NCBI GenBank assembly: GCA_965153285.1
Contig: OZ229115.1
Direction: 5' to 3' (one strand)
Origin: Podarcis tiliguerta
Taxonomy: Eukaryota
Length of the DNA stretch: 64,000 bases
Shown here: positions 35,901-44,163 of the stretch, in pieces
Layout of the letters: every line of letters begins with the position of its first letter
Numbering within the stretch: position 1 is the stretch's first letter
The notes under the pieces: generated by a model
Database searches by the model: none
Told to the model about the DNA's origin: nothing
What the model saw: only the letters and a program-made list of their open reading frames with translations
Program-made: the position numbers and the translations under genes

Positions 35901-38900
35901 TTTTACTTTTAAAACTGGCACAAGAAGCTCATGCTTTGATGATGATAGCAGTGTTGTGGAAGGGGGTGCTTAACCCTTTCTGCTCACACTGTTTCCCTGA
36001 TCTCTCCCCCCCCCCCACACTTTCTCCTGGATGCTGATGAGAACTTGGGGGAGGCGTGGCATAGGAGGGAGAGGTTAAAACCACCTCTCCTAGTTCTGCT
36101 GATATCAAATTTTGTGCCTGTTTGATGGTTTATTAAAAAGCCATGTGATCCATTTACAGATCTCCTGCATTGCATGTAGTTTGGACCCCCAAAACACAGA
36201 CACCACTAGAATTTGTTTTTGTTCCTATAAAATTATCCAAATATTTATCAGAGGTATTTCACACAATCAAACTGACAGAGACTGTGAGAGAGGAATAGAT
36301 TCTGAGCTAAGACGGGCACTTGCTGAAGCAGTTGTGTGATTGCCAAGAGGAATGCCACATACATGCACAGCTCGAAACTCCTCGTTTATGCTGTCACCAG
36401 AATGTCGCTTCGATGGAAGCGTAATAAATGTAGGTCACTGTGAACTGAGCCTTCAGGGAAGTGAATGCACAAAAGAATTGCTTCCACACATGTCGAAAAT
36501 CAGCTGATTTGGTTCGTAAGGACTGCTCCAATTCACCATCAGGACCCTTGCAAATTTGAGATTAAAACCAACTTGAGTTAGGGATACCAGGCGTTTGTGT
36601 GTGGCACCAGTTGGGAGAAGACTGGATGCAACAGGGATGATTCTTAGACTGAAAGCCCCCTCCACCTAGGTACAGTGATGAACACACTCTCTCTAACCAC
36701 CCTCCTCCTTTGGACACAGAGCGTGACACTGACTCAGACAGCGACCTCTCCCTGGAGGATGACCAGAGTGGCTCGTACGCTTCCACCCATTCCTCTGACA
36801 GTGAGGAGGATGAAGAATTTCCTAGGGAGCCCTGCTGGGAAAACTTGCTGTGCCCCAACAATGAGAAGCTGCCAGCACACAGCACTCCAAAGGGTAATGC
36901 TGGGGAAGGCTTATTATCATTATTTATTTATTTTATTCATTTATATAGACCCTGACCCACCTGCCAACCATAAGCTCTTTGGGTTCTCTACAACATAAAA
37001 ACAATAGGAACTATTGGAGGGGAAAGCAGATTTAAAACACAGCTTCTGGCAGCTCCAGGGATATCTGAGCCCTCCTACCTGTGGACTGGTGGGATGGGGT
37101 CAGAATTTGCAGACCTTGTGTTCAAACCTAGGTTTATTTTCTCTCTTTCCCCCAGTGGACAACCTCACTGGCCCTGGGAAACCTTACTGGCCAGGTGACT
37201 TTGTGACTACCGCTAGCGAGAGCGATGGGCATGTTGGCTCAGAGAAGCTGCGCGTGGAGCCCATGGGAAAGAACGACCGGCTGGGGCCCACAGAGGAGAT
37301 GCCCAGAGAGAATGGAGAGACACAGACCAGGGACGGCATCTTGGGCTCGCTGCCTCACCCCACAGCCCAGCCCCAGAAAGGTAAGGTTTGACTGTGGGAG
37401 ACCCCAACGCCCACTCACCTGCTCACCCATGAAATCTTAGAAGGGACCCCCTCCATCTGAGGTACCTTGCAGAATTGCGTCCTGGAATCCCAGTCCTATT
37501 CATCATATCAGTTTCAGAATTCAGTATTCTAAAGCCTCAGCCCAGAAACAGGATTCAAAGCAGTTAGTGAAATTTCATGGGGGTGAATATGATTTGTGGG
37601 GCTCAGGGTGTGGTCAGTACACTGCATAGCTCCTTGCCCCTTGGCGTGACTGGAAGCTGCTCACACACTTTTTCCTGATTGACATCATAAATGTGGGTGG
37701 CAGAAGCACTTTTTAATGTGGTGCAGAATAGGGATCCTGTGTCTGGAGTGCTGAGCATACTGAACCCTCATGCCAGGACTGTGGAACCTGTGGCCCTCCA
37801 GATATTGCTTGACAGCTAATGGTGCAGCAATAAAACTGCTAGCACATTTGCAAAGCTAAGCAGCGTCTGGTCTGGTTTCAAATTGGATGGGGGACCACGT
37901 GCTGAGATTCCTGCATTGCAGGGGGTTGGACTAGATGCCCCTTGGGATCCCTTCAATTCTGTGATTCTACAACTCCAACTTCCACCAGCCCCCGTTGATG
38001 TGGCCAATGGTCAGGAATGATGGGGAATGTTCTCCCGCAACATCGATTCCCCGCCCCTCCATTGCCCATATCCCAGAAAGCCAGGATTGGCCAATTCCCC
38101 GTTCCATATTGGCAACCTTGCTACCTGGTGAGGACATTTCCCTTGACCCCAGAACCTTGTGCCCTCCTCAGGCATCCTCAAGAAGAAGTGCTTGCCGCCC
38201 ATCAGTGAGAAGAACAGCATCCAGCGGATCCACAACAAGCTCTCCAGCTGCCGCTCAGGGATGGTGTCATCGCACGGCTCTTCGGGGAGCGACGGCAGCC
38301 GTGGGGGAGGGCCCCCGCGCCCCCGCCAGACGCTACAGGAGCAGCTCAATGGCCTTACGCCCATCACCATGAGCATAAAGACTGGCACAGTGGATGAGGA
38401 CTCTTCGGGCTCCGAGTGAGTATGGCTGAGCCTTCTCCCTGGGGGGCGATGCCCTCCACAGCCCACTCGCCTGAGCCCGCCGCCTCTGTGGAGCCCCCTC
38501 GCCCACACCATGCCTGGTGCATCGGATCCTCCGGGCTGCGACTCCGCTGTGTCTCACCTGTCCCCAGGCTGTGCCTCTCTCAAAACGTCTCCCTGTCTGC
38601 TGCCTTGTAGCTCCTTAGATCCTTCGTAGCTTTCGCTAAATGTTCTTGCCGTTTCACTGGACCTTATTTTCACATGGGCTTGCTAAGAATCTCTACTTCT
38701 ATTTCCTTTGCCTTTTCCACTCACGGGCTAGATCCTGACCTGGCACATGGCCAGGAGTGTACCTGTTTCTTCAGGAGCCACCCCATGCCCCACATCCCAA
38801 TTTGGAAAAGGTGTCAAGGCAGCCTTAAAAAACAGGCTGTGTCAGCCGTCCCTTTGCCGCCCCTTGTAGGCTGGGAGGGGGGAGATTTATTGGAATGTGT

Positions 38901-39304
38901 GGGGAGCATGGGAACCAGTTTGCCCAGTGGGATACTGGGAGAAGATAGCATCCCGGGGCTGAGGCTAGAAGCTATAGATGAGGCATCCTTTCCTCTGGGC
39001 AATGGGCTCTGATCCTCTCAAATGCCATGTCTTTTCCTGTGTTCTTGTAAGATGCTCAGGGACTGGGCACAAGCCTGCCTTGCAGATCCTGACCTGAGCA
39101 AGTGGGTTGGGCTAGGAGCCATCCTGACCCTGGGCAGGGCTGGGTGGATGTGGGGGGGGGGGGGAGACACGCTGTCCTATTCTAACTTCTTCCTCAGCTC
39201 TCTGGCACTAACCCAACCTCTCCTCCCTTCTCTGTCTTTCTCTCGTTCTCTCCCCTCTCGCTTCAATCTCGCCCAGATTTCTGTTTTTTAATTTCCTCCA
39301 TTAA
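1808..39304 (+). CDS. CELSR2: Cadherin EGF LAG seven-pass G-type receptor 2 (adhesion GPCR). 5'-partial gene span with 32 coding exons; the cadherin-repeat exons lie upstream of the window.
   Basis: The spliced translation matches recalled human CELSR2 from [18 protein letters not shown] to the CELSR2-type C-terminus [16 protein letters not shown]. All 31 introns are GT-AG and exon phases join without frameshift. Confidence 0.97.
2222..2310 (+). CDS. CELSR2: CELSR2 exon (LamG1)
   Basis: [29 protein letters not shown]|gtaagt; 89 nt. Confidence 0.95.
2326..2467 (+). mobile_element. tRNA-Lys(CTT)-derived SINE with CR1-type 3' tail
   Basis: tagctcagtcggtagagcatgagactcttcatctcagggttgtgggttcaag..cacattgggc is a mutated tRNA-Lys lacking the 5' acceptor strand. 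The tail is agggggttgaactagag..attctatgattc. Confidence 0.85.
3872..4229 (+). mobile_element. Full-length Sauria SINE
   Basis: GGGACGCGGGTGGCGCTGTGGG head, (ACCTTT)n tail, 13-bp TSD TATAGGGAGAAGT at 3857-3869 and 4230-4242. Confidence 0.92.
5647..6167. mobile_element. Old non-autonomous hAT (Charlie-like) element
   Basis: Terminal inverted repeats cagaggtggggaacc ... ggttccccacccctg. Confidence 0.55.
7759..8001 (-). mobile_element. Solo LTR (243 bp)
   Basis: 5-bp TSD CCATG (7754-7758, 8002-8006). On -, TATAAAA (7871-7865) is followed by AATAAA (7819-7814). One terminus is intact (CA on -); the other dinucleotide is mutated. Confidence 0.75.
12694..12851 (+). CDS. CELSR2: CELSR2 exon (LamG1)
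   Basis: [26 protein letters not shown]...GTQSGTK; 158 nt. Confidence 0.95.
13300..13532. mobile_element. Tc1/mariner (Tigger/pogo-like) MITE
   Basis: TA + CAGTCGTACC ... GGTACGACTG; same family as 51893-52123. Confidence 0.75.
13796..13959 (+). CDS. CELSR2: CELSR2 exon (end of LamG1)
   Basis: [22 protein letters not shown]...[13 protein letters not shown]; 164 nt. Confidence 0.95.
14250..14375 (+). CDS. CELSR2: CELSR2 exon (EGF)
   Basis: [41 protein letters not shown]; 126 nt. Confidence 0.95.
15120..15403. mobile_element. Nested palindromic hAT-type MITEs (younger copy at about 15142-15278 inside an older one)
   Basis: The outer gatggggaacct ... aggttccccatgcctg is split by an inner ttctcaacctgtgg..actacaactcccatca..tgatgggagttgtagt..cacaggttgagaa. 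Confidence 0.7.
15436..15571. mobile_element. Near-perfect palindromic MITE (136 bp)
   Basis: 58-bp inverted arms with 2 mismatches. Confidence 0.85.
15826..15863. repeat. (CA)n(GA)n microsatellite
   Basis: Direct inspection. Confidence 0.9.
16596..16762 (+). CDS. CELSR2: CELSR2 exon (LamG2)
   Basis: [15 protein letters not shown]...[12 protein letters not shown]...STITLW; 167 nt. Confidence 0.93.
16929..17114 (+). CDS. CELSR2: CELSR2 exon (LamG2)
   Basis: [10 protein letters not shown]...[11 protein letters not shown]...FDYGLHQ; 186 nt. Confidence 0.93.
17338..17487. mobile_element. hAT-type MITE
   Basis: caatgctgtttt...aaaaaaagccctg; degenerate 8-bp TSD cctctacc/cctctatt. Confidence 0.6.
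17587..17700 (+). CDS. CELSR2: CELSR2 exon (LamG2)
   Basis: [24 protein letters not shown]...GFRGCMQ; 114 nt. Confidence 0.93.
17919..17990. repeat. (CT)n(GT)n microsatellite
   Basis: Direct inspection; it is the source of the ERERER/LSLSLS ORFs. Confidence 0.9.
18977..19151 (+). CDS. CELSR2: CELSR2 exon (end of LamG2/EGF)
   Basis: GVRMGET...[32 protein letters not shown]; 175 nt. Confidence 0.95.
19338..19403 (-). mobile_element. Penelope terminal-repeat fragment with mutated minimal hammerhead
   Basis: On -: gtatCTGAAGAagtgtgcatgcacacAAAAgctca..ttggtctctaaggtgctac. Confidence 0.65.
19675..20173 (-). mobile_element. Solo LTR (499 bp)
   Basis: TGTCAGG...CCTGACA termini with a perfect 5-bp TSD GGTGG (19670-19674, 20174-20178). 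Orientation is inferred from the internal ORF. Confidence 0.8.
20312..20453 (+). CDS. CELSR2: CELSR2 exon (EGF)
   Basis: [46 protein letters not shown]; 142 nt. Confidence 0.95.
21666..21786 (+). CDS. CELSR2: CELSR2 exon (EGF)
   Basis: [40 protein letters not shown]; 121 nt. Confidence 0.95.
22559..22732. mobile_element. hAT-type MITE (174 bp)
   Basis: Perfect 8-bp TSD ACTGGTAG (22551-22558, 22733-22740); CAGTGCTTTTT left terminus. Confidence 0.8.
23177..23360 (+). CDS. CELSR2: CELSR2 exon (laminin EGF)
   Basis: [28 protein letters not shown]...[17 protein letters not shown]; 184 nt. Confidence 0.95.
24087..24188 (+). CDS. CELSR2: CELSR2 exon (hormone receptor motif)
   Basis: [33 protein letters not shown]; 102 nt. 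Confidence 0.95.
24400..24520 (-). mobile_element. Degenerate Penelope terminal-repeat fragment
   Basis: ttcagaggtgtagctgcgttcgtct..ggccccttagatgcaaacaaatgtatt..tgatgc resembles the copies at 556-630 and 19338-19403. Confidence 0.5.
24554..24648 (+). CDS. CELSR2: CELSR2 exon (hormone receptor motif)
   Basis: [31 protein letters not shown]; 95 nt. Confidence 0.95.
25243..25452 (+). CDS. CELSR2: CELSR2 exon (GAIN)
   Basis: AERLWRNES...[13 protein letters not shown]; 210 nt. Confidence 0.95.
25630..25817 (+). mobile_element. CR1 LINE 3' end fragment
   Basis: ..gccactgtgag..gctggactagatgggcctgatccagcaagctcttctt tail. Confidence 0.55.
26633..26816 (+). CDS. CELSR2: CELSR2 exon (GAIN)
   Basis: [11 protein letters not shown]...[15 protein letters not shown]...PFTIITPNI; 184 nt. 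Confidence 0.95.
26836..27348. mobile_element. Old hAT (Ac-like) non-autonomous element with a nested MITE at about 27059-27185
   Basis: TAGGGCTG...GCGACCCTA termini; subterminal aatcgactaa/aatcaactaa motifs. Confidence 0.45.
27812..27955 (+). CDS. CELSR2: CELSR2 exon (GAIN)
   Basis: [47 protein letters not shown]; 144 nt. Confidence 0.95.
28223..28400 (+). CDS. CELSR2: CELSR2 exon (GAIN)
   Basis: PSMANAK...[38 protein letters not shown]; 178 nt. Confidence 0.93.
29131..29298 (+). CDS. CELSR2: CELSR2 exon (GAIN/start of GPS)
   Basis: [18 protein letters not shown]...[16 protein letters not shown]; 168 nt. Confidence 0.96.
29416..29542 (+). CDS. CELSR2: CELSR2 exon (GPS and Stachel)
   Basis: [42 protein letters not shown]; 127 nt. 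Confidence 0.96.
29715..29915 (+). CDS. CELSR2: CELSR2 exon (TM1-2)
   Basis: [12 protein letters not shown]...[10 protein letters not shown]; 201 nt. Confidence 0.96.
30114..30288 (+). CDS. CELSR2: CELSR2 exon (TM3-4)
   Basis: [14 protein letters not shown]...[18 protein letters not shown]; 175 nt. Confidence 0.96.
30622..30734 (+). CDS. CELSR2: CELSR2 exon (ECL2/TM5)
   Basis: [37 protein letters not shown]; 113 nt. Confidence 0.96.
31741..31820 (+). CDS. CELSR2: CELSR2 exon (TM5/ICL3)
   Basis: [26 protein letters not shown]; 80 nt. Confidence 0.94.
32362..32488 (+). CDS. CELSR2: CELSR2 exon (TM6-7)
   Basis: [42 protein letters not shown]; 127 nt. Confidence 0.95.
33102..33224 (+). CDS. 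CELSR2: CELSR2 exon (TM7/helix 8)
   Basis: [41 protein letters not shown]; 123 nt; not in the ORF track. Confidence 0.94.
33896..33985. mobile_element. 90-bp palindromic hAT MITE
   Basis: CATAGCTGTCAA...TTGACAGCTATG; TSD agcatgag/agcacgag. Confidence 0.8.
34395..34525 (+). CDS. CELSR2: CELSR2 exon (C-tail)
   Basis: [43 protein letters not shown]; 131 nt. Confidence 0.94.
35121..35209 (+). CDS. CELSR2: CELSR2 exon (C-tail)
   Basis: [29 protein letters not shown]; 89 nt. Confidence 0.9.
36720..36893 (+). CDS. CELSR2: CELSR2 exon (acidic SE/D region)
   Basis: [33 protein letters not shown]...HSTPK; 174 nt. Confidence 0.94.
37156..37380 (+). CDS. CELSR2: CELSR2 exon (C-tail)
   Basis: [22 protein letters not shown]...AQPQK; 225 nt. 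Confidence 0.92.
37814..37968 (+). mobile_element. 5S-rRNA-derived SINE with CR1-type tail, inserted inside a MITE
   Basis: aagctaagcagcgtctggtctggtt..ttggatgggggacc matches the 5S internal control region. The tail is agattcctgcattgcagggggttggactagatg..gtgattct. Confidence 0.75.
38172..38415 (+). CDS. CELSR2: CELSR2 penultimate coding exon
   Basis: [13 protein letters not shown]...[27 protein letters not shown]; 244 nt. Confidence 0.95.
39277..39304 (+). CDS. CELSR2: CELSR2 terminal coding exon (human-type FLFFNFLH*)
   Basis: Long pyrimidine tract, then cag|A TTT CTG TTT TTT AAT TTC CTC CAT TAA. Confidence 0.92.
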
Positions 39305-39411
39305 CACGCGAGCCCCAGGGGGGGTGCTTTGCTCAAACCTGCTCACGACCATGCTCATGTGTTTGTTTCCCCCCGTCCCCCCGTCTCGCTTTGTGTTTGA
39401 TCACTGAGCAG

Positions 39412-39433
39412 GAGCGATGAAACCTCAATCTGA
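39412..39433 (+). CDS. CELSR2: Candidate alternative CELSR2 terminal coding segment (SDETSI*, PDZ-binding)
   Basis: Second pyrimidine tract at 39361-39398, then gagcag|G AGC GAT GAA ACC TCA ATC TGA, in frame with the phase-2 donor at 38415. Confidence 0.7.
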
Positions 39434-42400
39434 CGCCAACGCCTGCACCAGGCTCTGTTTCCCTTGTGCTTTGGCCAGTCCGGGAGCCAGGATTGCTCTC
39501 AAACCGCAGCGAGGAATGTTGTCTCCTTCAGCCCAGCCCGGCCCAGGGAGCCGGACCCACCATACCTAGTGCCAAATGAAAACCGAGCTGCCGCCCCGGC
39601 ACCTGGGGGGGAGGGGAACAGCAGGTCCCAGGAGGTGGACCTACTTGAACCGATGCACTTTGGATCATTGTGAAAACAGACAAACAAGAAACACAAACTC
39701 AACCACCTCCACGTCTTCAGGGATTTTCATGCTTTGTTGCCCAGTCTGGAACTGCTGTGTGTCTGGAATATTTTTCTCTCTTTCTTATCTATCAGAATTG
39801 GGCTGGGGGAGCCTCAGCAGTAACCACGTGCCCAGGCTTCTTGCAAATGCATTACCTGTGAAGATGCTTGCATATCTGACAATGGGGATGAGCTAGGAGC
39901 CTGTGCACTTGAAGATGGCTGCCGCCAGGGGGCACTGAAAACCGTAGGTTTTAGCATGCGAGGCAAATGTAGATGGCATCTTCCTCCTCAAATGGTAACT
40001 TGGAATTAAAGCCTGAGGGCGTGACAGACTTGGCCATGCGGGAGGGACCTGCGTGAGACCTATGCTACGTGCCGCTTGGAGAAAGTAGGCAGGCTGTGCA
40101 TAGAAGCTGACTCCTTCGGAGGCTCTAAGACCTCAGTTGCATATAAACAAAACCAGGAGAGAGCCCTCATCCCCCTGCTCTGCAGTGTGTGTGTATCATA
40201 ATCATGCTTTTTATGACCCAGTAGCATGGGCTTAAGCACACCTCCCAAGGTGCAACTAAGGCACGGTAAAACAATGCGCAGGTCAGTCTCTGGCTATTTG
40301 GCACATAGGAAAGTTTGGAGCCCGAGATCTTGGTTGTGCCGTGCCAATCAACCATAGAACTGAGAAGGAAAAGATCGTCCAAATAGCTTTCCCTGGACTC
40401 TGTAGACATACACTAGCGCTCCCTGCAGGTGCGCAGTACCACCTCGTCTCAAGGAAAATAAAAGGCTTTTCCTGCTCTTACAGTTTTAACAGAGTGGTTG
40501 GATTGTTACAGAAACCCAGAGCCATTGTCGCAGGACGCGAATTGCCATGATGCTACCTACAGCCGTGGTCTGGACAGATTTGCTGGGTCTGCTGTGGATC
40601 TAGCCCCTTCCCTGGGCCAGCCTCAGTGCCCCAGACTGCACAGTGGGACCAGGGGCTTAGGACCTCCCCAGTGGGCCACTGCTGGCATCCGTGGAAATGC
40701 TCCATCCTGGACCAGGGCTAACATCCTTTTTGGGTTGCGACAGCCACTCCTCTCCAAGCTCAGCCTGCCAATCCAGTGACTCGGCCCCGTGGGGATGCTC
40801 TGAGAGGCAGCCCACCAAGGTGCTGAGCGCCGTGGGTGTGGCCTGCTGAGCCGTCAGCCCATGCTGCAATTATTTTCGTAGACAATGACAAAAAAGAAAA
40901 AAGTCCCACCTCCCTGCTCCTCTCAGCCAATCAGCACCTGGTCCACGTGCTGCCAGGCCGGAGCCGGGATGCTGCCTTGATGTCTCTCAATAGCGCCTGG
41001 CTCTCATGCCAACAGGGTGCTGCCTTTCTGCCTCAGAAGCCTTCATTTTTCTACACTCAGCCAAGCCTGATGCCTGCTCATAATGGGGATTTTCATGCTG
41101 GGTCCTTTTGGAAAGTACTTTTTTATAACGTTCCTTGGGGTGGGGGTGGGTGGGAGAAGAGAGATTTTTCTGATAAGGGAGTTGGGGGAAGAGGGGGAGG
41201 GCGGCCGGGGGAAGAGGGGTGAAGGCACTGTTTATTTTGATGTTGTGGGTTTTTTTAAAAAAAATATTTGACCACTGCTGAAGGATGTTCTAATTTAAAA
41301 GAGATGGAAAGCCCCTTAGGGGGGCTACATCTTTAGATTCGTAGCAATGTTAAGTCTCATTAGCCGGGGCGCAAGATGCGATGCGCTTGAACTGACTTGG
41401 TCGAGGTTTGCACAATGAGGAGTTAATTGAGACTTGACCATTGCTATGATCTGGCTTGTCAAAGGATATGGTTCCCAAAAACACACCCCAAGGCTTCTGT
41501 GTTCGTTGCCTCTAGGAATCTTGGCCATTGCCGTCAGGCCTTTTTAGTGGCCTCTGTCCTTGCCAATTCCTATCCTTTTCTTGGAATGTTTTAACATGGA
41601 TGTGATTCTCATGAACCTGTGTAATGTCAGCCTGGCACTTTAGCAGCAGCCGCCCACAACGCTAAGCAGACAAGGGGGCTCAGCTCCAGCCTCTTTAATA
41701 CATGGATTATCCAGAGAGAGTCTTGCTTCCAACTAGTGTCCCCGGTAAGCCCATTTAAGTGAAAGGCGAAACTGGTGTTTCCCTCGCTTCTGTATCCAAA
41801 ACAATAGTATCTGACTAATTTCCACCTGCAAGTCTATGCTGTCAGTGACATCCAGCCCCACTTGGGACAACTTATTCTCATATCTAAAGCAAAGTGGAGA
41901 CCTATATTGAAATAAGGGTGGTCCAGACAGGCAAGGGCCCACAATTCCCCTTGTGTGATGCTGTCTGATGGGTATTCCAGCACTAAAGACAGATCAAGCA
42001 ATCTCTGGACTTCCTGTCTCCTCCCGTAGGTGACCGAGGCTTCTGAGCACAGGGAACTGGGTGCAGCCCTTGGTCCTTGCTGGTCTACCAAATCATCTAG
42101 AACAAAAGCTGCACGTGCTGATCAACTTTAGACACACGGAACAATCAGAACCAATTCAGAAATGGACTAGGAGAGGCAACAAGAGGAGCTTACCCTCTCA
42201 GACTTTGCATTGCTAACTCCAAGCGAGAGCAAGCAACGTCCCGGATCTCTAGACTCCAGTGAAGTATCTGCAGAAGTCGAGGAATACCTTCTGTGGTGCT
42301 GAATTATGGCTTGGAGGGAGGACCAACAGTTACTGTTGTTACCATGTCTTCCATAACACCGCCCCCTCCCACAGGAAAAGCTGGACGCATCTCTTCCTGC

Positions 42401-44163
42401 CAGCATTTGCCAAATATTTTCTCTTTCAAGGTTACACGACAAGCAGCTAGCTAGCAGGTGCAGCCATTCCTATTACTGAAGCTGCATGCTAGGAAAAGCT
42501 TCACCTGCTACCTTTTTCGCTTGCCATGAGACCAGGAAAGACACAGGAGTTGTACTAGGGGGGAGATTTCAACCTGCTCCCCACCCCACTCCCTACAGTA
42601 CCTCTAACCTAAGGTTTTAGTCTGCAACCCCCGTGCACAGAATAGTCTACCGTACCTTCCTATGCAAGCTCTTTCTCACGTGGAGAAAGCGCTAACTGAA
42701 CAGATCTGAAAAGCAGTATTGAGGAAAGAATTATTCAGCACAAGCTCTCTCGAAGCAGCTGTTAACTTCTAGAACAAACTGTCTTCTGCCCCATTACTCT
42801 GTCCAAGACGGGGCAGAATTGGAGCGGCGAGGGCATGTCCCTCCATTTGTGACCAAGTGTTAATGAAACCTTTAAAAGCACCAGAGATTGAGGAGGCAGC
42901 AGCTCCTAGACGAAGCACCATGCAAGAACTCAGCTTCTGCTCCATTACTGCAATTTGCAAAATCTTTTTGAGTCTTAAACCTGCCGTCCGCAGAGAACCT
43001 GTTTCGCCCATCTATAGAATTTATGTGTTTGGCGTGTCTGCATTTTAATTTATTTTTTTTACTGTTATCTTTTTGATGTGTATTCTTATATTTACTGGCA
43101 ACTATCTGCCTGCTGCTGTGCCATCCTAGGGGAAGGGCTGGGACAAATTAGAGTCAAGGGGGTGAGAGGGGGTGGAGAGAATACCACCACCTAGGTCCTT
43201 CGAACCAGAAGTGTTAAGTTAAAAGGTATGTGAAGTCGGGAAACGTCTAGGGAAGTGCATGGAGAAGCAGCCTACTGCTGGTTAATCATCTTAAGCTGCA
43301 TCCTATAGAAGGCACAGCCTGCCACATGGATCTTCCACCTGGGAGGTTAGGTAGATCGGCTGACCCTGTGGCACTCAGTCAGGGAGGGATGGGGAACCAG
43401 TGACTCTACAGATGCCACTGGACTCTGCCTCATCCCTTACCATTGGCCATACTGGCTGGGGCTGGTGGGAGCTGGAGCCCAGCAACATCCCTGTTCCTGC
43501 ACTAAATGGACCATATAATAGGAGTCGAGAGTCTGAATGAACTGGCACCTGCAGTGAAGTTGCATTTGCTGCAGACTTTGGCTCTGCTCCTTTGCACAGC
43601 TCACCACATCCTTCACTTCACAGCCACCACCGTCCCCACCTGAGCACATGTACTTGTGGACTCAGTGTGTCAATATTAGCTCCAAAGCAGCCGACTTGTC
43701 AATCCACCACCTTCCTCTGCAATAGCCAATGGGGTCATTTTCAGCAGAGCTCAACCAGAGCCAGATACAGTTGCCTCCTTTTGCTGGTAGGGCACCAGTG
43801 CCTTGGATTGCTGCACGACAGACAGCAATTCAACAGACTTCTTTTCTGTTATTGTATCTTCAGGCTGGAAGAAGGGAATGCTACACCTGCCTGCCAGGTA
43901 GCTATTGAAGGTGCTGAAGCGTTACCAGGAAAGAATGGCAACTCTACTTTCCCCTAAGAAGCCTAGCTCTTCTCCCTTTTAGCAAGCCAGGGTATAGGGG
44001 GGAGATCAGAGGGGGGAAATGTGGTGGTTTCACCTTTTGGAGGAACAAAATGTTTTACCGACTGCTGTGATGCTGGCTCTTCCCTGGAAACAAAATAGTT
44101 GAAGTGTACAGGTAGGGTTGTTAATGTAAATACTGTAGGGTTCATTCCCCTTACCTACTAAAC

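What the first reader, a model, noticed from the sequence alone, without database searches (positions are those of the whole stretch)
39361..39433. Hidden alternative CELSR2 C-terminus ending in a class I PDZ-binding motif (ETSI*)
Seen: 135 nt downstream of the FLFFNFLH acceptor lies a second pyrimidine tract and acceptor. Splicing from 38415 gives ..[14 protein letters not shown]. The acceptor is a GAG-CAG-GAG tandem, so all three AGs keep this frame. Known: E-T/S-x-I/V-COOH is the class I PDZ ligand, and CELSR1 is recalled to have alternative EKP and PDZ-type (..NETSI) tails, whereas reference CELSR2 ends in FLFFNFLH. Inference: a splice switch toggling PDZ-scaffold coupling of this planar-polarity receptor, possibly also present in mammalian CELSR2 3' UTRs.
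Basis: partly seen in the sequence, partly recalled or inferred. Interest (0 to 1): 0.8.

Follow-up and report, generated by a model that had tools for sequence, protein, structure and literature searches.

The report
CELSR2 alternative PDZ-motif tail, already annotated
The predicted second ending of the CELSR2 planar-polarity receptor (…SDETSI, a PDZ-docking motif) is real, is spliced exactly as predicted and is conserved from sharks to mammals, but gene annotations in dozens of species already list it, so it is not a new discovery.

Summary
The exon ends at 38415 and its donor GTGAGT starts at 38416. A proximal acceptor (exon start 39277) gives E-FLFFNFLH-stop. A distal gAG-cAG-gAG cluster (exon start 39412) gives E-SDETSI-stop.

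RNA data from a roughly 98%-identical organism contain the exact GT..AG joint 38415→39412. It appears in assembled contigs from two studies and in one raw stranded read from a third. No 38415→39277 joint reached the listing threshold in those four runs.

In a sample of 156 CELSR2 protein models, 66 end in an ETSI-type tail and 56 in [16 protein letters not shown]. The ETSI group covers sharks, rays, sturgeon, bichir, gar, lungfish, salamanders, caecilians, turtles, crocodilians and mammals; a partial falcon model outside the sample ends the same way. Both tails are often listed for one species as isoforms X1 and X2. Both endings are therefore old and under constraint, and the PDZ-motif tail is already annotated rather than "hidden".

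The mechanism is a choice between two acceptors within the terminal exon. The last intron is also heavily retained, which reads …SGSE-stop.

PDZ binding was not tested here. It is inferred from the class I consensus and from fly Flamingo/Stan.

Verdict: real, ordinary, already known; low interest.

The parts
38172..38415 (+). Penultimate coding exon of CELSR2 (..[16 protein letters not shown]...[11 protein letters not shown] plus GA). It is phase 1 at its 5' end and leaves 2 nt of the last codon at its 3' end.
   Evidence: The upstream junction is supported by 5 (X23) and 8 (X24) reads whose loose ends read the previous exon (table 7). Homologues are all CELSR2.
38416..38421 (+). Donor GTGAGT. 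If the intron is retained, the frame reads GAG (38414-16) then TGA (38417-19), giving ..SGSE-stop.
   Evidence: All genomic read-through ORFs of other species end in SGSE. The intron is covered at about exon depth in stranded RNA reads (table 2).
39167..39276 (+). Long CU-rich pyrimidine tract (80% C+T, 77 nt without AG) and the proximal acceptor AG at 39275-76.
39277..39304 (+). Proximal tail: completes E, then FLFFNFLH and TAA (39302-04). This is the tail of the reference-type isoform.
   Evidence: Fifty-five of the 156 sampled models end in an identical peptide, from sharks to mammals, and one newt model ends EFLFFNFRH. No 38415->39277 joint reached the listing threshold in the four runs laid.
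39319..39406 (+). AG-free zone containing the second pyrimidine tract (39361-39399). A candidate branch point CUCAC has its A at 39345.
   Evidence: The branch point is inference only. Organism A carries small insertions in the tract at 39365-39368 (table 4).
39407..39414 (+). Tandem acceptor cluster gAG-cAG-gAG. The AG actually used is 39410-11, the only one with a pyrimidine at -3.
   Evidence: The joint to 39412 appears in X1, X3 and X24 (table 5). No joint to 39409 or 39415 was listed.
39412..39433 (+). Distal tail: completes E, then SDETSI and TGA (39431-33). This is a class I PDZ-binding consensus at the free C-terminus.
   Evidence: The ESDETSI tail is identical in Gavialis, Alligator, Crocodylus, Chrysemys X2, Trachemys X2, Falco, axolotl and caecilians.
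39434..42500 (+). 3' UTR shared by both spliced forms. It is covered by + strand RNA to at least the end of the stretch laid.
   Evidence: tables 2 and 8. Every read pair has its first mate on the - strand, which in most stranded libraries means + strand RNA.

Best explanation
This is the 3' end of a sauropsid CELSR2 (ADGRC2) gene. Its last intron has one donor (38415|38416) and two competing acceptors inside the same terminal exon.

The proximal acceptor (exon start 39277) adds E-FLFFNFLH-stop. The rest of the exon, including the SDETSI codons, then becomes 3' UTR.

The distal acceptor (the cAG of a gAG-cAG-gAG cluster, exon start 39412) skips those 135 nt and adds E-SDETSI-stop. That tail carries a class I PDZ-binding motif preceded by an acidic, serine-rich stretch.

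A third outcome, retention of the intron, stops translation right at the donor (..SGSE-stop).

Shown here:
- The distal junction exists in RNA.
- Both tails are encoded by CELSR2 of jawed vertebrates from sharks to mammals. Many of those species have both tails annotated as separate isoforms.
- Retention is abundant.

Inferred, not shown:
- The ETSI tail docks PDZ proteins. Candidates by analogy are SNX27-retromer and Dishevelled, as for the PBM-bearing Stan-PA isoform of fly Flamingo.
- The acceptor choice is tissue-regulated. The long CU tract before the proximal acceptor would fit PTBP-type repression outside neurons.
For: - Sequence anatomy.
- Gene identity: 7tm_2 and Laminin_G exons lie on the + strand, and every hit to the tail exon is named CELSR2.
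- RNA: the joint 38415->39412 (GT..AG) occurs in an X1 contig (depth 15.5), in an X3 59-nt contig spanning 38387-38415 plus 39412-39441 (depth 21.3), and in one X24 read with 72 nt on its shorter side. The raw reads are fully strand-specific.
- Independent transcripts elsewhere: P0011 is a 119-aa ORF from a Logan (SRA-run assembly) contig, spliced at both flanking introns and ending SGSESDETSI. P0040 is a 3023-aa ORF on an 11.4-kb Logan contig, also ending SDETSI.
- Census of 156 CELSR2 models: 66 have ETSI-type tails and 56 have [16 protein letters not shown]. Both tails occur in the same species for Chrysemys, Trachemys, Sciurus, Cavia, Canis, Myotis and Sarcophilus.
- Retention: in X3, exon depth 70.2 is about equal to intron 45.8 plus junction 21.3. 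In the raw reads the intron is covered as deeply as the exon. The mouse Celsr2 table in PMC6667449 lists a terminal 'exon' spanning the last intron at 16% mean and up to 57% of transcripts.
- Fly precedent: Fmi/Stan has two alternatively spliced C-termini. The class I PBM form binds Snx27 and the DVL2 PDZ domain (PMC6370945, PMC9234668).
Against: - No PDZ binding was tested. PMC9234668 reports moderate binding of a human 'CELSR2' peptide to the DVL2 PDZ domain, but the text held does not say which tail was used.
- Regulation is not shown. The tissues of the four runs are coded, and read depth at the junction is low (0 and 1 raw reads).
- The RNA comes from 'organism A', about 98% identical to the window. 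The best DNA holder is 'organism D'.
- Mouse isoform X2 ends DSDEPSI, with proline at -2, so the motif is not invariant.
- Many of the 66 models are Gnomon predictions. They prove coding potential and often RNA support, not protein.
Confidence: 0.85

Rival explanations
1. The SDETSI reading frame is a chance ORF in the 3' UTR. The junction is splicing noise with no protein-level role.
For: Junction support in raw reads is thin: 1 read in X24 and none in X23. A random tail ends in [ST]x[VIL] about 1% of the time.
Against: The peptide, its stop and its frame are kept in 66 models across roughly 450 million years (a divergence time from general knowledge, not computed here), from rays to marsupials. 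The junction is the only splice of this intron assembled in two independent contig sets, at about 30-40% of exon depth. A full-length transcript assembly ends the same way (P0040).
Confidence: 0.03
2. There is no regulated toggle. The two acceptors, together with retention, simply compete. Every expressing cell makes a fixed mixture, or the ETSI form is the constitutive product and FLFFNFLH is a minor by-product in this lineage.
For: No 38415->39277 joint was listed in any of the four runs, while 38415->39412 was. Crocodilian models listed carry only ESDETSI.
Against: FLFFNFLH with its acceptor and stop is intact in the window and invariant from sharks to mammals (55 of the 156 sampled models; one newt model reads FLFFNFRH), which argues that it is used. 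In human data, RefSeq NM_001408.3 makes up 63-95% of CELSR2 in forebrain samples. An unannotated 34-exon variant makes up 77-100% in four gut tissues and 96% in cerebellum (PMC11039983 Table S5). Whether that variant is the ETSI form could not be verified.
Confidence: 0.2
3. The functionally important product of this intron is the retained-intron mRNA, which encodes a receptor ending ..SGSE and lacking both tails. Alternatively, the intron is nuclear-detained and controls dosage. On this view the two spliced tails are secondary.
For: Strand-specific RNA covers intron 38416-38834 at exon depth in X23 and X24. Contig depths in the intron are 65-75% of exon depth in X1 and X3, while upstream introns are spliced out. 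The same retention is frequent in mouse fat and islets. Because this is the last intron, retention would not trigger nonsense-mediated decay (established rule, not tested).
Against: Both tails are strongly conserved as peptides, which retention alone would not require. The library type (polyA or total RNA) is unknown, so the intron signal could come from nuclear pre-mRNA. Depth is low.
Confidence: 0.15

Closest known systems
Annotated CELSR2 'isoform X2'-type models (for example Chrysemys picta X2, Trachemys scripta X2, Alligator mississippiensis X1/X2, Gavialis XP_019369272.1, Falco XP_056217817.1, Ambystoma X2)
   Same: They share the same penultimate exon end (..DEDSSGS) and an identical tail E-SDETSI-stop. 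In turtles the sister isoform X1 ends E-FLFFNFLH and is 2 residues longer, exactly as predicted from the window.
   Different: Nothing of substance differs. The window's own species annotation could not be inspected. Mammals, sharks and ray-finned outgroups have D instead of E at the junction (DSDETSI, DSSDETSI) because the tandem AGs sit differently.
Drosophila Flamingo/Starry night isoforms (Stan-PA with a class I PBM, and the other isoform without a working PBM)
   Same: Both are seven-pass cadherins of the core planar-polarity pathway with two alternatively spliced C-termini. In each, one terminus ends in a class I PDZ-binding motif. In the fly, that motif binds Snx27 for retromer recycling and binds the Dishevelled PDZ domain (PMC6370945, PMC9234668).
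   Different: Homology of the tails and of the splice architecture between fly and vertebrates was not tested here. In flies, truncating the PBM alone gave no overt polarity phenotype (PMC9234668).
Latrophilin-3 (ADGRL3) C-terminal transcript variants with or without a PBM
   Same: It is another adhesion GPCR in which alternative 3' splicing decides whether the tail ends in a PDZ-binding motif, in that case a SHANK-binding one (PMC10592476).
   Different: In latrophilin-3 the alternative tails are long and affect G-protein coupling. In CELSR2 only the last 7-9 residues change.
NAGNAG tandem acceptors
   Same: The cluster has AGs 3 nt apart. In mammals and sharks both neighbouring forms are annotated in the same species: DSDETSI with DDETSI, and DSSDETSI with DSDETSI.
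   Different: In the runs laid on this window only the cAG (start 39412) was used. The two gAGs have a disfavoured G at -3.

Membership tests
CELSR2 / ADGRC2 orthologue | Secretin-type 7TM and laminin-G/EGF exons on the same strand upstream of the tail | tested here: met
   Pfam 7tm_2 (E 1.6e-9 and 9.6e-17) and Laminin_G_2 match + strand exons.
CELSR2 / ADGRC2 orthologue | The cytoplasmic tail exon is most similar to CELSR2 rather than to CELSR1 or CELSR3 | tested here: met
   All named hits are CELSR2, apart from two Alligator entries (P0156, P0157) whose NCBI name says receptor 3 and whose UniRef name says CELSR2. The best named hit is Gavialis, 65 of 80 identical.
CELSR2 / ADGRC2 orthologue | Synteny with PSRC1 downstream, and cadherin repeats in exon 1 | not tested
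   PSRC1 is mentioned only in an earlier unchecked note. No cadherin exon was looked for in the window.
Class I PDZ-binding motif (X-S/T-X-hydrophobic-COOH) | S or T at -2, a hydrophobic residue at 0, and a stop codon immediately after | tested here: met
   The tail is ..D-E-T-S-I followed by TGA at 39431-33. T-S-I is kept in 65 of the 66 ETSI-type models; the exception is mouse X2 with P at -2.
Class I PDZ-binding motif (X-S/T-X-hydrophobic-COOH) | Physical binding to a PDZ domain | not testable with these tools
   The only literature hint is that a human 'CELSR2' peptide bound the DVL2 PDZ domain moderately. Which tail was used is not stated in the text held.
Alternative 3' splice site within a terminal exon | One donor joined to two acceptors in RNA, with a shared downstream UTR | tested here: inconclusive
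   The distal joint was seen in 3 runs. The proximal joint was not listed in the 4 runs laid. Both products are annotated in related turtles and many other species.
NAGNAG tandem acceptor | More than one of the AGs spaced 3 nt apart is used | tested here: not met
   Only the joint to 39412 was listed. All sauropsid and amphibian ETSI-type models carry ESDETSI only, while mammals and sharks show pairs.
Flamingo/Stan-PA-like PBM isoform | Two alternatively spliced C-termini, one of which is a class I PBM | tested here: met
   for CELSR2. PMC9234668 and PMC6370945 for the fly.
Flamingo/Stan-PA-like PBM isoform | The PBM engages SNX27-retromer and/or Dishevelled | not testable with these tools
   Analogy only.

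The most novel reading that the evidence does not exclude
The last intron of CELSR2 may be a three-way decision kept since the ancestor of jawed vertebrates. The options are the proximal acceptor (invariant FLFFNFLH tail, partner unknown, possibly the forebrain form), the distal acceptor (PDZ-motif tail, the main spliced form elsewhere), and retention (..SGSE-stop, lacking both tails). If so, functional work done with the FLFFNFLH cDNA would miss the PDZ-coupled receptor made by most non-forebrain cells. The unannotated human variant reported as dominant in gut and cerebellum (PMC11039983) would then be this isoform.
Probability: 0.35. Interest if true: 0.5.

Novelty: already known. Interest (0 to 1): 0.25.

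Why it matters
CELSR2 acts in planar polarity, ependymal cilia orientation and neurite growth, according to the literature read here. Its tail decides which cytoplasmic partners it can recruit. The PDZ-motif isoform is well annotated but hardly studied. None of the papers found discusses the two CELSR2 tails explicitly.

For the scan, the result is mainly a calibration point. A reader working from raw sequence correctly predicted a real, conserved splice junction to the base. What it predicted, however, is ordinary annotated biology.

Tried and rejected
The DNA of the contigs behind P0011 and P0001 could therefore not be read, and no nucleotide alignment of the acceptor region across species was possible. 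Conservation rests on protein models.
- Literature searches for the peptide itself ('ETSI' with CELSR, 'DETSI') returned only unrelated words.
- The peptide table (Fig. 3A) of PMC9234668 is an image, and the supplement holds no sequences.
- Exon coordinates for the human variant NSTRG.3707.1 are not in the held supplements, so its identity with the ETSI form stays open.
- The mouse Celsr2 exon table shows one terminal acceptor plus intron retention in fat and islets. It does not say which tail that acceptor gives.
- The idea that all three AGs are used was rejected for this lineage.
Exons were searched singly by reference. The tails were translated only inside a script, from the window file.

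Full report
**What is in the sequence.** The + strand of the window carries the 3' two-thirds of an adhesion-GPCR gene. Laminin-G and EGF exons lie from about 13.7 kb, and 7TM exons at 29.4-32.6 kb match Pfam 7tm_2 (E 1.6e-9 and 9.6e-17; Laminin_G_2 also matches). Cytoplasmic-tail exons follow, up to 38415.

The penultimate coding exon is 38172-38415. It ends ..[11 protein letters not shown] plus the two bases GA. The donor is a consensus GTGAGT at 38416.

After a 77-nt AG-free tract that is 80% pyrimidine and CU-rich, the proximal acceptor AG at 39275-76 opens an exon at 39277. This reads GA|A = E, then FLFFNFLH and TAA at 39302-04.

An 88-nt AG-free zone (39319-39406) follows, containing a second pyrimidine tract at 39361-39399. 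Then comes gAG-cAG-gAG at 39407-39414. Starting at 39412 gives GA|G = E, then SDETSI and TGA at 39431-33.

As a chance baseline, I spliced each of the 275 AGs between 38440 and 42500 to the same donor. Only 4 give a tail ending [ST]-x-[VIL]-stop, and 3 of those are this cluster.

**RNA evidence.** One search for sequencing runs and one read-laying run were allowed. I laid four runs on window:38100-42500, starting there to stay clear of the SINE noted at 37814-37968.
- X23 and X24 are raw stranded RNA-seq from one study.
- X1 (2017) and X3 (2025) are Logan (SRA-run assembly) contigs from two further studies.

All four runs are labelled organism A. Its reads are mostly 95-99% identical to the window. 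The best DNA holder of the stretch (share 0.98) is labelled organism D. The RNA therefore comes from a very close relative or a divergent population, not certainly from the same individual.

The joint 38415->39412 (GT..AG, skipping 996 nt) is present in three places:
- an X1 contig at depth 15.5;
- a 59-nt X3 contig that covers 38387-38415 joined to 39412-39441, at depth 21.3;
- one X24 read with 72 nt on its shorter side.

No joint to 39277, 39409 or 39415 reached the listing threshold in any run. Every read pair has its first mate on the - strand. That fits + strand RNA and excludes genomic DNA as the source of the raw reads.

**Retention of the last intron.** The upstream intron is spliced. 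Five reads in X23 and eight in X24 carry the end of the previous exon (..[10 protein letters not shown]) before 38170. The X1 and X3 contigs also run on for 0.8-1.7 kb upstream, and their loose ends carry that same previous-exon sequence.

The last intron behaves differently. Its first 420 nt are covered as deeply as the exon in X23 and X24. Intron contigs have depth 27.5 against exon 36.5 in X1, and 45.8 against 70.2 in X3. In X3, 45.8 plus 21.3 roughly accounts for the exon depth of 70.2.

A retained intron reads GAG TGA at the donor, so the protein would end ..SGSE.

The mouse Celsr2 exon table in PMC6667449 shows the same thing. A terminal 'exon' at 108390877-108393245 spans the last intron. 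It accounts for a mean of 16% of transcripts, and up to 36-57% in fat samples.

Caveats: read depth is low, the library selection (polyA or total RNA) is unknown, and the tissues are coded.

**Conservation and prior annotation.** A word search with the penultimate exon alone (window:38174-38413) returned short ORFs. Most are genomic read-throughs ending SGSE.

P0011, from a Logan assembly, is different. It is spliced at both flanking introns..PLPHPHK|GILKKK at the upstream one and ..SGSE|SDETSI-stop at the downstream one. Its bird-like neighbour P0019 reads through the upstream intron instead.

The cluster listing revealed NCBI XP_056217817.1, a partial Falco CELSR2-like model ending ..SGSESDETSI.

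A region search with the C-terminal 86 residues of a sturgeon CELSR2 (P0029), plus the members of ten clusters, gave 156 CELSR2 models. Their tails are:
- 55 EFLFFNFLH and 1 EFLFFNFRH;
- 27 DSDETSI, 15 DSSDETSI, 13 ESDETSI and 7 DDETSI;
- single cases of DSSNETAI, DSSGETSI, DSDGTSI and DSDEPSI;
- teleost tails ending TSM, TCM or ESV;
- several read-through 'E' or 'ES' ends.

The ETSI group covers sharks, rays, sturgeon, bichir, gar, lungfish, axolotl, caecilians, turtles, crocodilians, marsupials, bats, dog, squirrel, guinea pig and mole; the partial falcon model noted above, found outside this sample, ends the same way. It also includes a full-length newt-like transcript ORF (P0040, 3023 aa on an 11.4-kb Logan contig).

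Both tails are annotated within single species. In Chrysemys and Trachemys, X1 is FLFFNFLH (2999 aa) and X2 is ESDETSI (2997 aa). The same holds for Sciurus, Cavia, Canis, Myotis and Sarcophilus.

Pairs that differ by one residue occur in one species: DSDETSI with DDETSI in Sciurus, Myotis myotis, Monodelphis and Macrotis, and DSSDETSI with DSDETSI in Heterodontus. These document use of tandem acceptors in those lineages.

Both tails therefore go back to the common ancestor of jawed vertebrates, and public annotation already carries the PDZ-motif tail. It is not hidden.

**Mechanism.**
- Shown: one donor, and a distal acceptor used in RNA. Coding potential for both tails is conserved, and the last intron is abundantly retained.
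- Follows from the sequence: use of the proximal acceptor places the SDETSI codons in the 3' UTR. This is therefore a choice of 3' splice site within one terminal exon with a shared UTR, not two separate terminal exons.
- The cAG is the expected winner of the cluster, because the two flanking AGs have G at -3. That preference is established knowledge.
- Inferred: ..S-E-S-D-E-T-S-I-COOH is a class I PDZ ligand (T at -2, I at 0) with acidic and phosphorylatable residues upstream.

The nearest functional precedent is fly Flamingo/Stan. It also has two alternatively spliced C-termini. The class I PBM of Stan-PA binds Snx27 for retromer recycling (PMC6370945) and binds the DVL2 PDZ domain by NMR (PMC9234668). 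The same paper states that human CELSR1 and CELSR2 peptides bound moderately. Which CELSR2 tail was used is given only in a figure I could not read.

Regulation is a hypothesis. In human data (PMC11039983, Table S5) RefSeq NM_001408.3 makes up 63-95% of CELSR2 in forebrain samples. An unannotated 34-exon variant with the same 3' end makes up 96% in cerebellum and 77-100% in esophagus, stomach, small intestine and duodenum. The text says such new dominant variants differ in amino-acid sequence 'e.g. ADGRC2/CELSR2'. That fits a split between an FLFFNFLH forebrain form and an ETSI form elsewhere. I could not verify that the variant differs at this acceptor.

The CU-rich tract before the proximal acceptor (two UCUU, four UCUCU) would suit PTBP-type repression outside neurons. 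That is speculation.

**Comparison and novelty.** The feature belongs to the annotated CELSR2 isoform pair, typically labelled X1 and X2. It works like other adhesion-GPCR C-terminal splice variants that add or remove a PBM, for example latrophilin-3 (PMC10592476). It parallels the fly Stan isoforms.

I rate it as already known at the level of annotation. Dedicated functional literature on the two CELSR2 tails was not found in the library searched. The surveys of mouse and human aGPCR transcripts record 'variability in C terminus' for Celsr2 without discussing the motif.

**Limits.**
Exons were searched singly by reference.
- The large representative search and the third word search were not used.

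Noticed in passing
window 38416-39276 (last CELSR2 intron): The intron is strongly retained in strand-specific RNA, at about exon depth in X23 and X24 and at 65-75% of exon depth in the X1 and X3 contigs. Upstream introns are spliced. Retention gives ..SGSE-stop at 38417-19. The same retention is frequent in a published mouse Celsr2 transcript table.
   Followed up: partly
window 39277-39304: The FLFFNFLH tail is invariant from sharks to mammals in 55 of the 156 sampled models; one newt model has FLFFNFRH. It is not a canonical PDZ ligand and has no known partner in the papers read. No joint to it was listed in the four RNA runs.
   Followed up: partly
P0067 (Mus musculus CELSR2 isoform X2), compared with window 39412-39433: The mouse version of the tail reads DSDEPSI. 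Proline replaces the -2 threonine that defines a class I motif. Every other ETSI-type model keeps T-S-I or T-A-I. This matters when choosing a model organism.
   Followed up: no
window 38977-39078, 39162 and 39365-39368: Organism A differs from the window by a 100-nt stretch replaced by CCA (X3), by 7 nt missing in the poly-G run near 39162, and by small insertions inside the pyrimidine tract ahead of the distal acceptor (TGT in X3; G and TCCCC in X1). The acceptor and the SDETSI codons themselves show no listed difference.
   Followed up: no
window 38181 (run X1 loose end): One X1 contig joins the exon 10 nt inside its 5' end to unrelated sequence (ACCTGATGCCTCTCCTGACC...). That sequence is neither the window's intron nor the previous exon. 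It may be an alternative upstream junction or an assembly chimera.
   Followed up: no
P0091, P0103, P0114, P0125 (bat and squirrel CELSR2 models): A fourth annotated ending, ..SSGSEG-stop, occurs in several mammalian models. It suggests yet another acceptor in the terminal exon of mammals.
   Followed up: no
P0070, P0074, P0075, P0078, P0077, P0079 (teleost CELSR2 models): Teleost tails end ..STSM, ..FTSM, ..KTSM or ..NTCM, which keeps T at -2 with Met at 0. In poeciliids a longer tail ends ..AESV. Milkfish keeps FLFFNFLH.
   Followed up: no
window 39434-42500 and beyond: The CELSR2 3' UTR is covered by + strand RNA for at least 3.1 kb. One X1 contig continues about 1.7 kb past 42500. No poly(A) site was located.
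   Followed up: no
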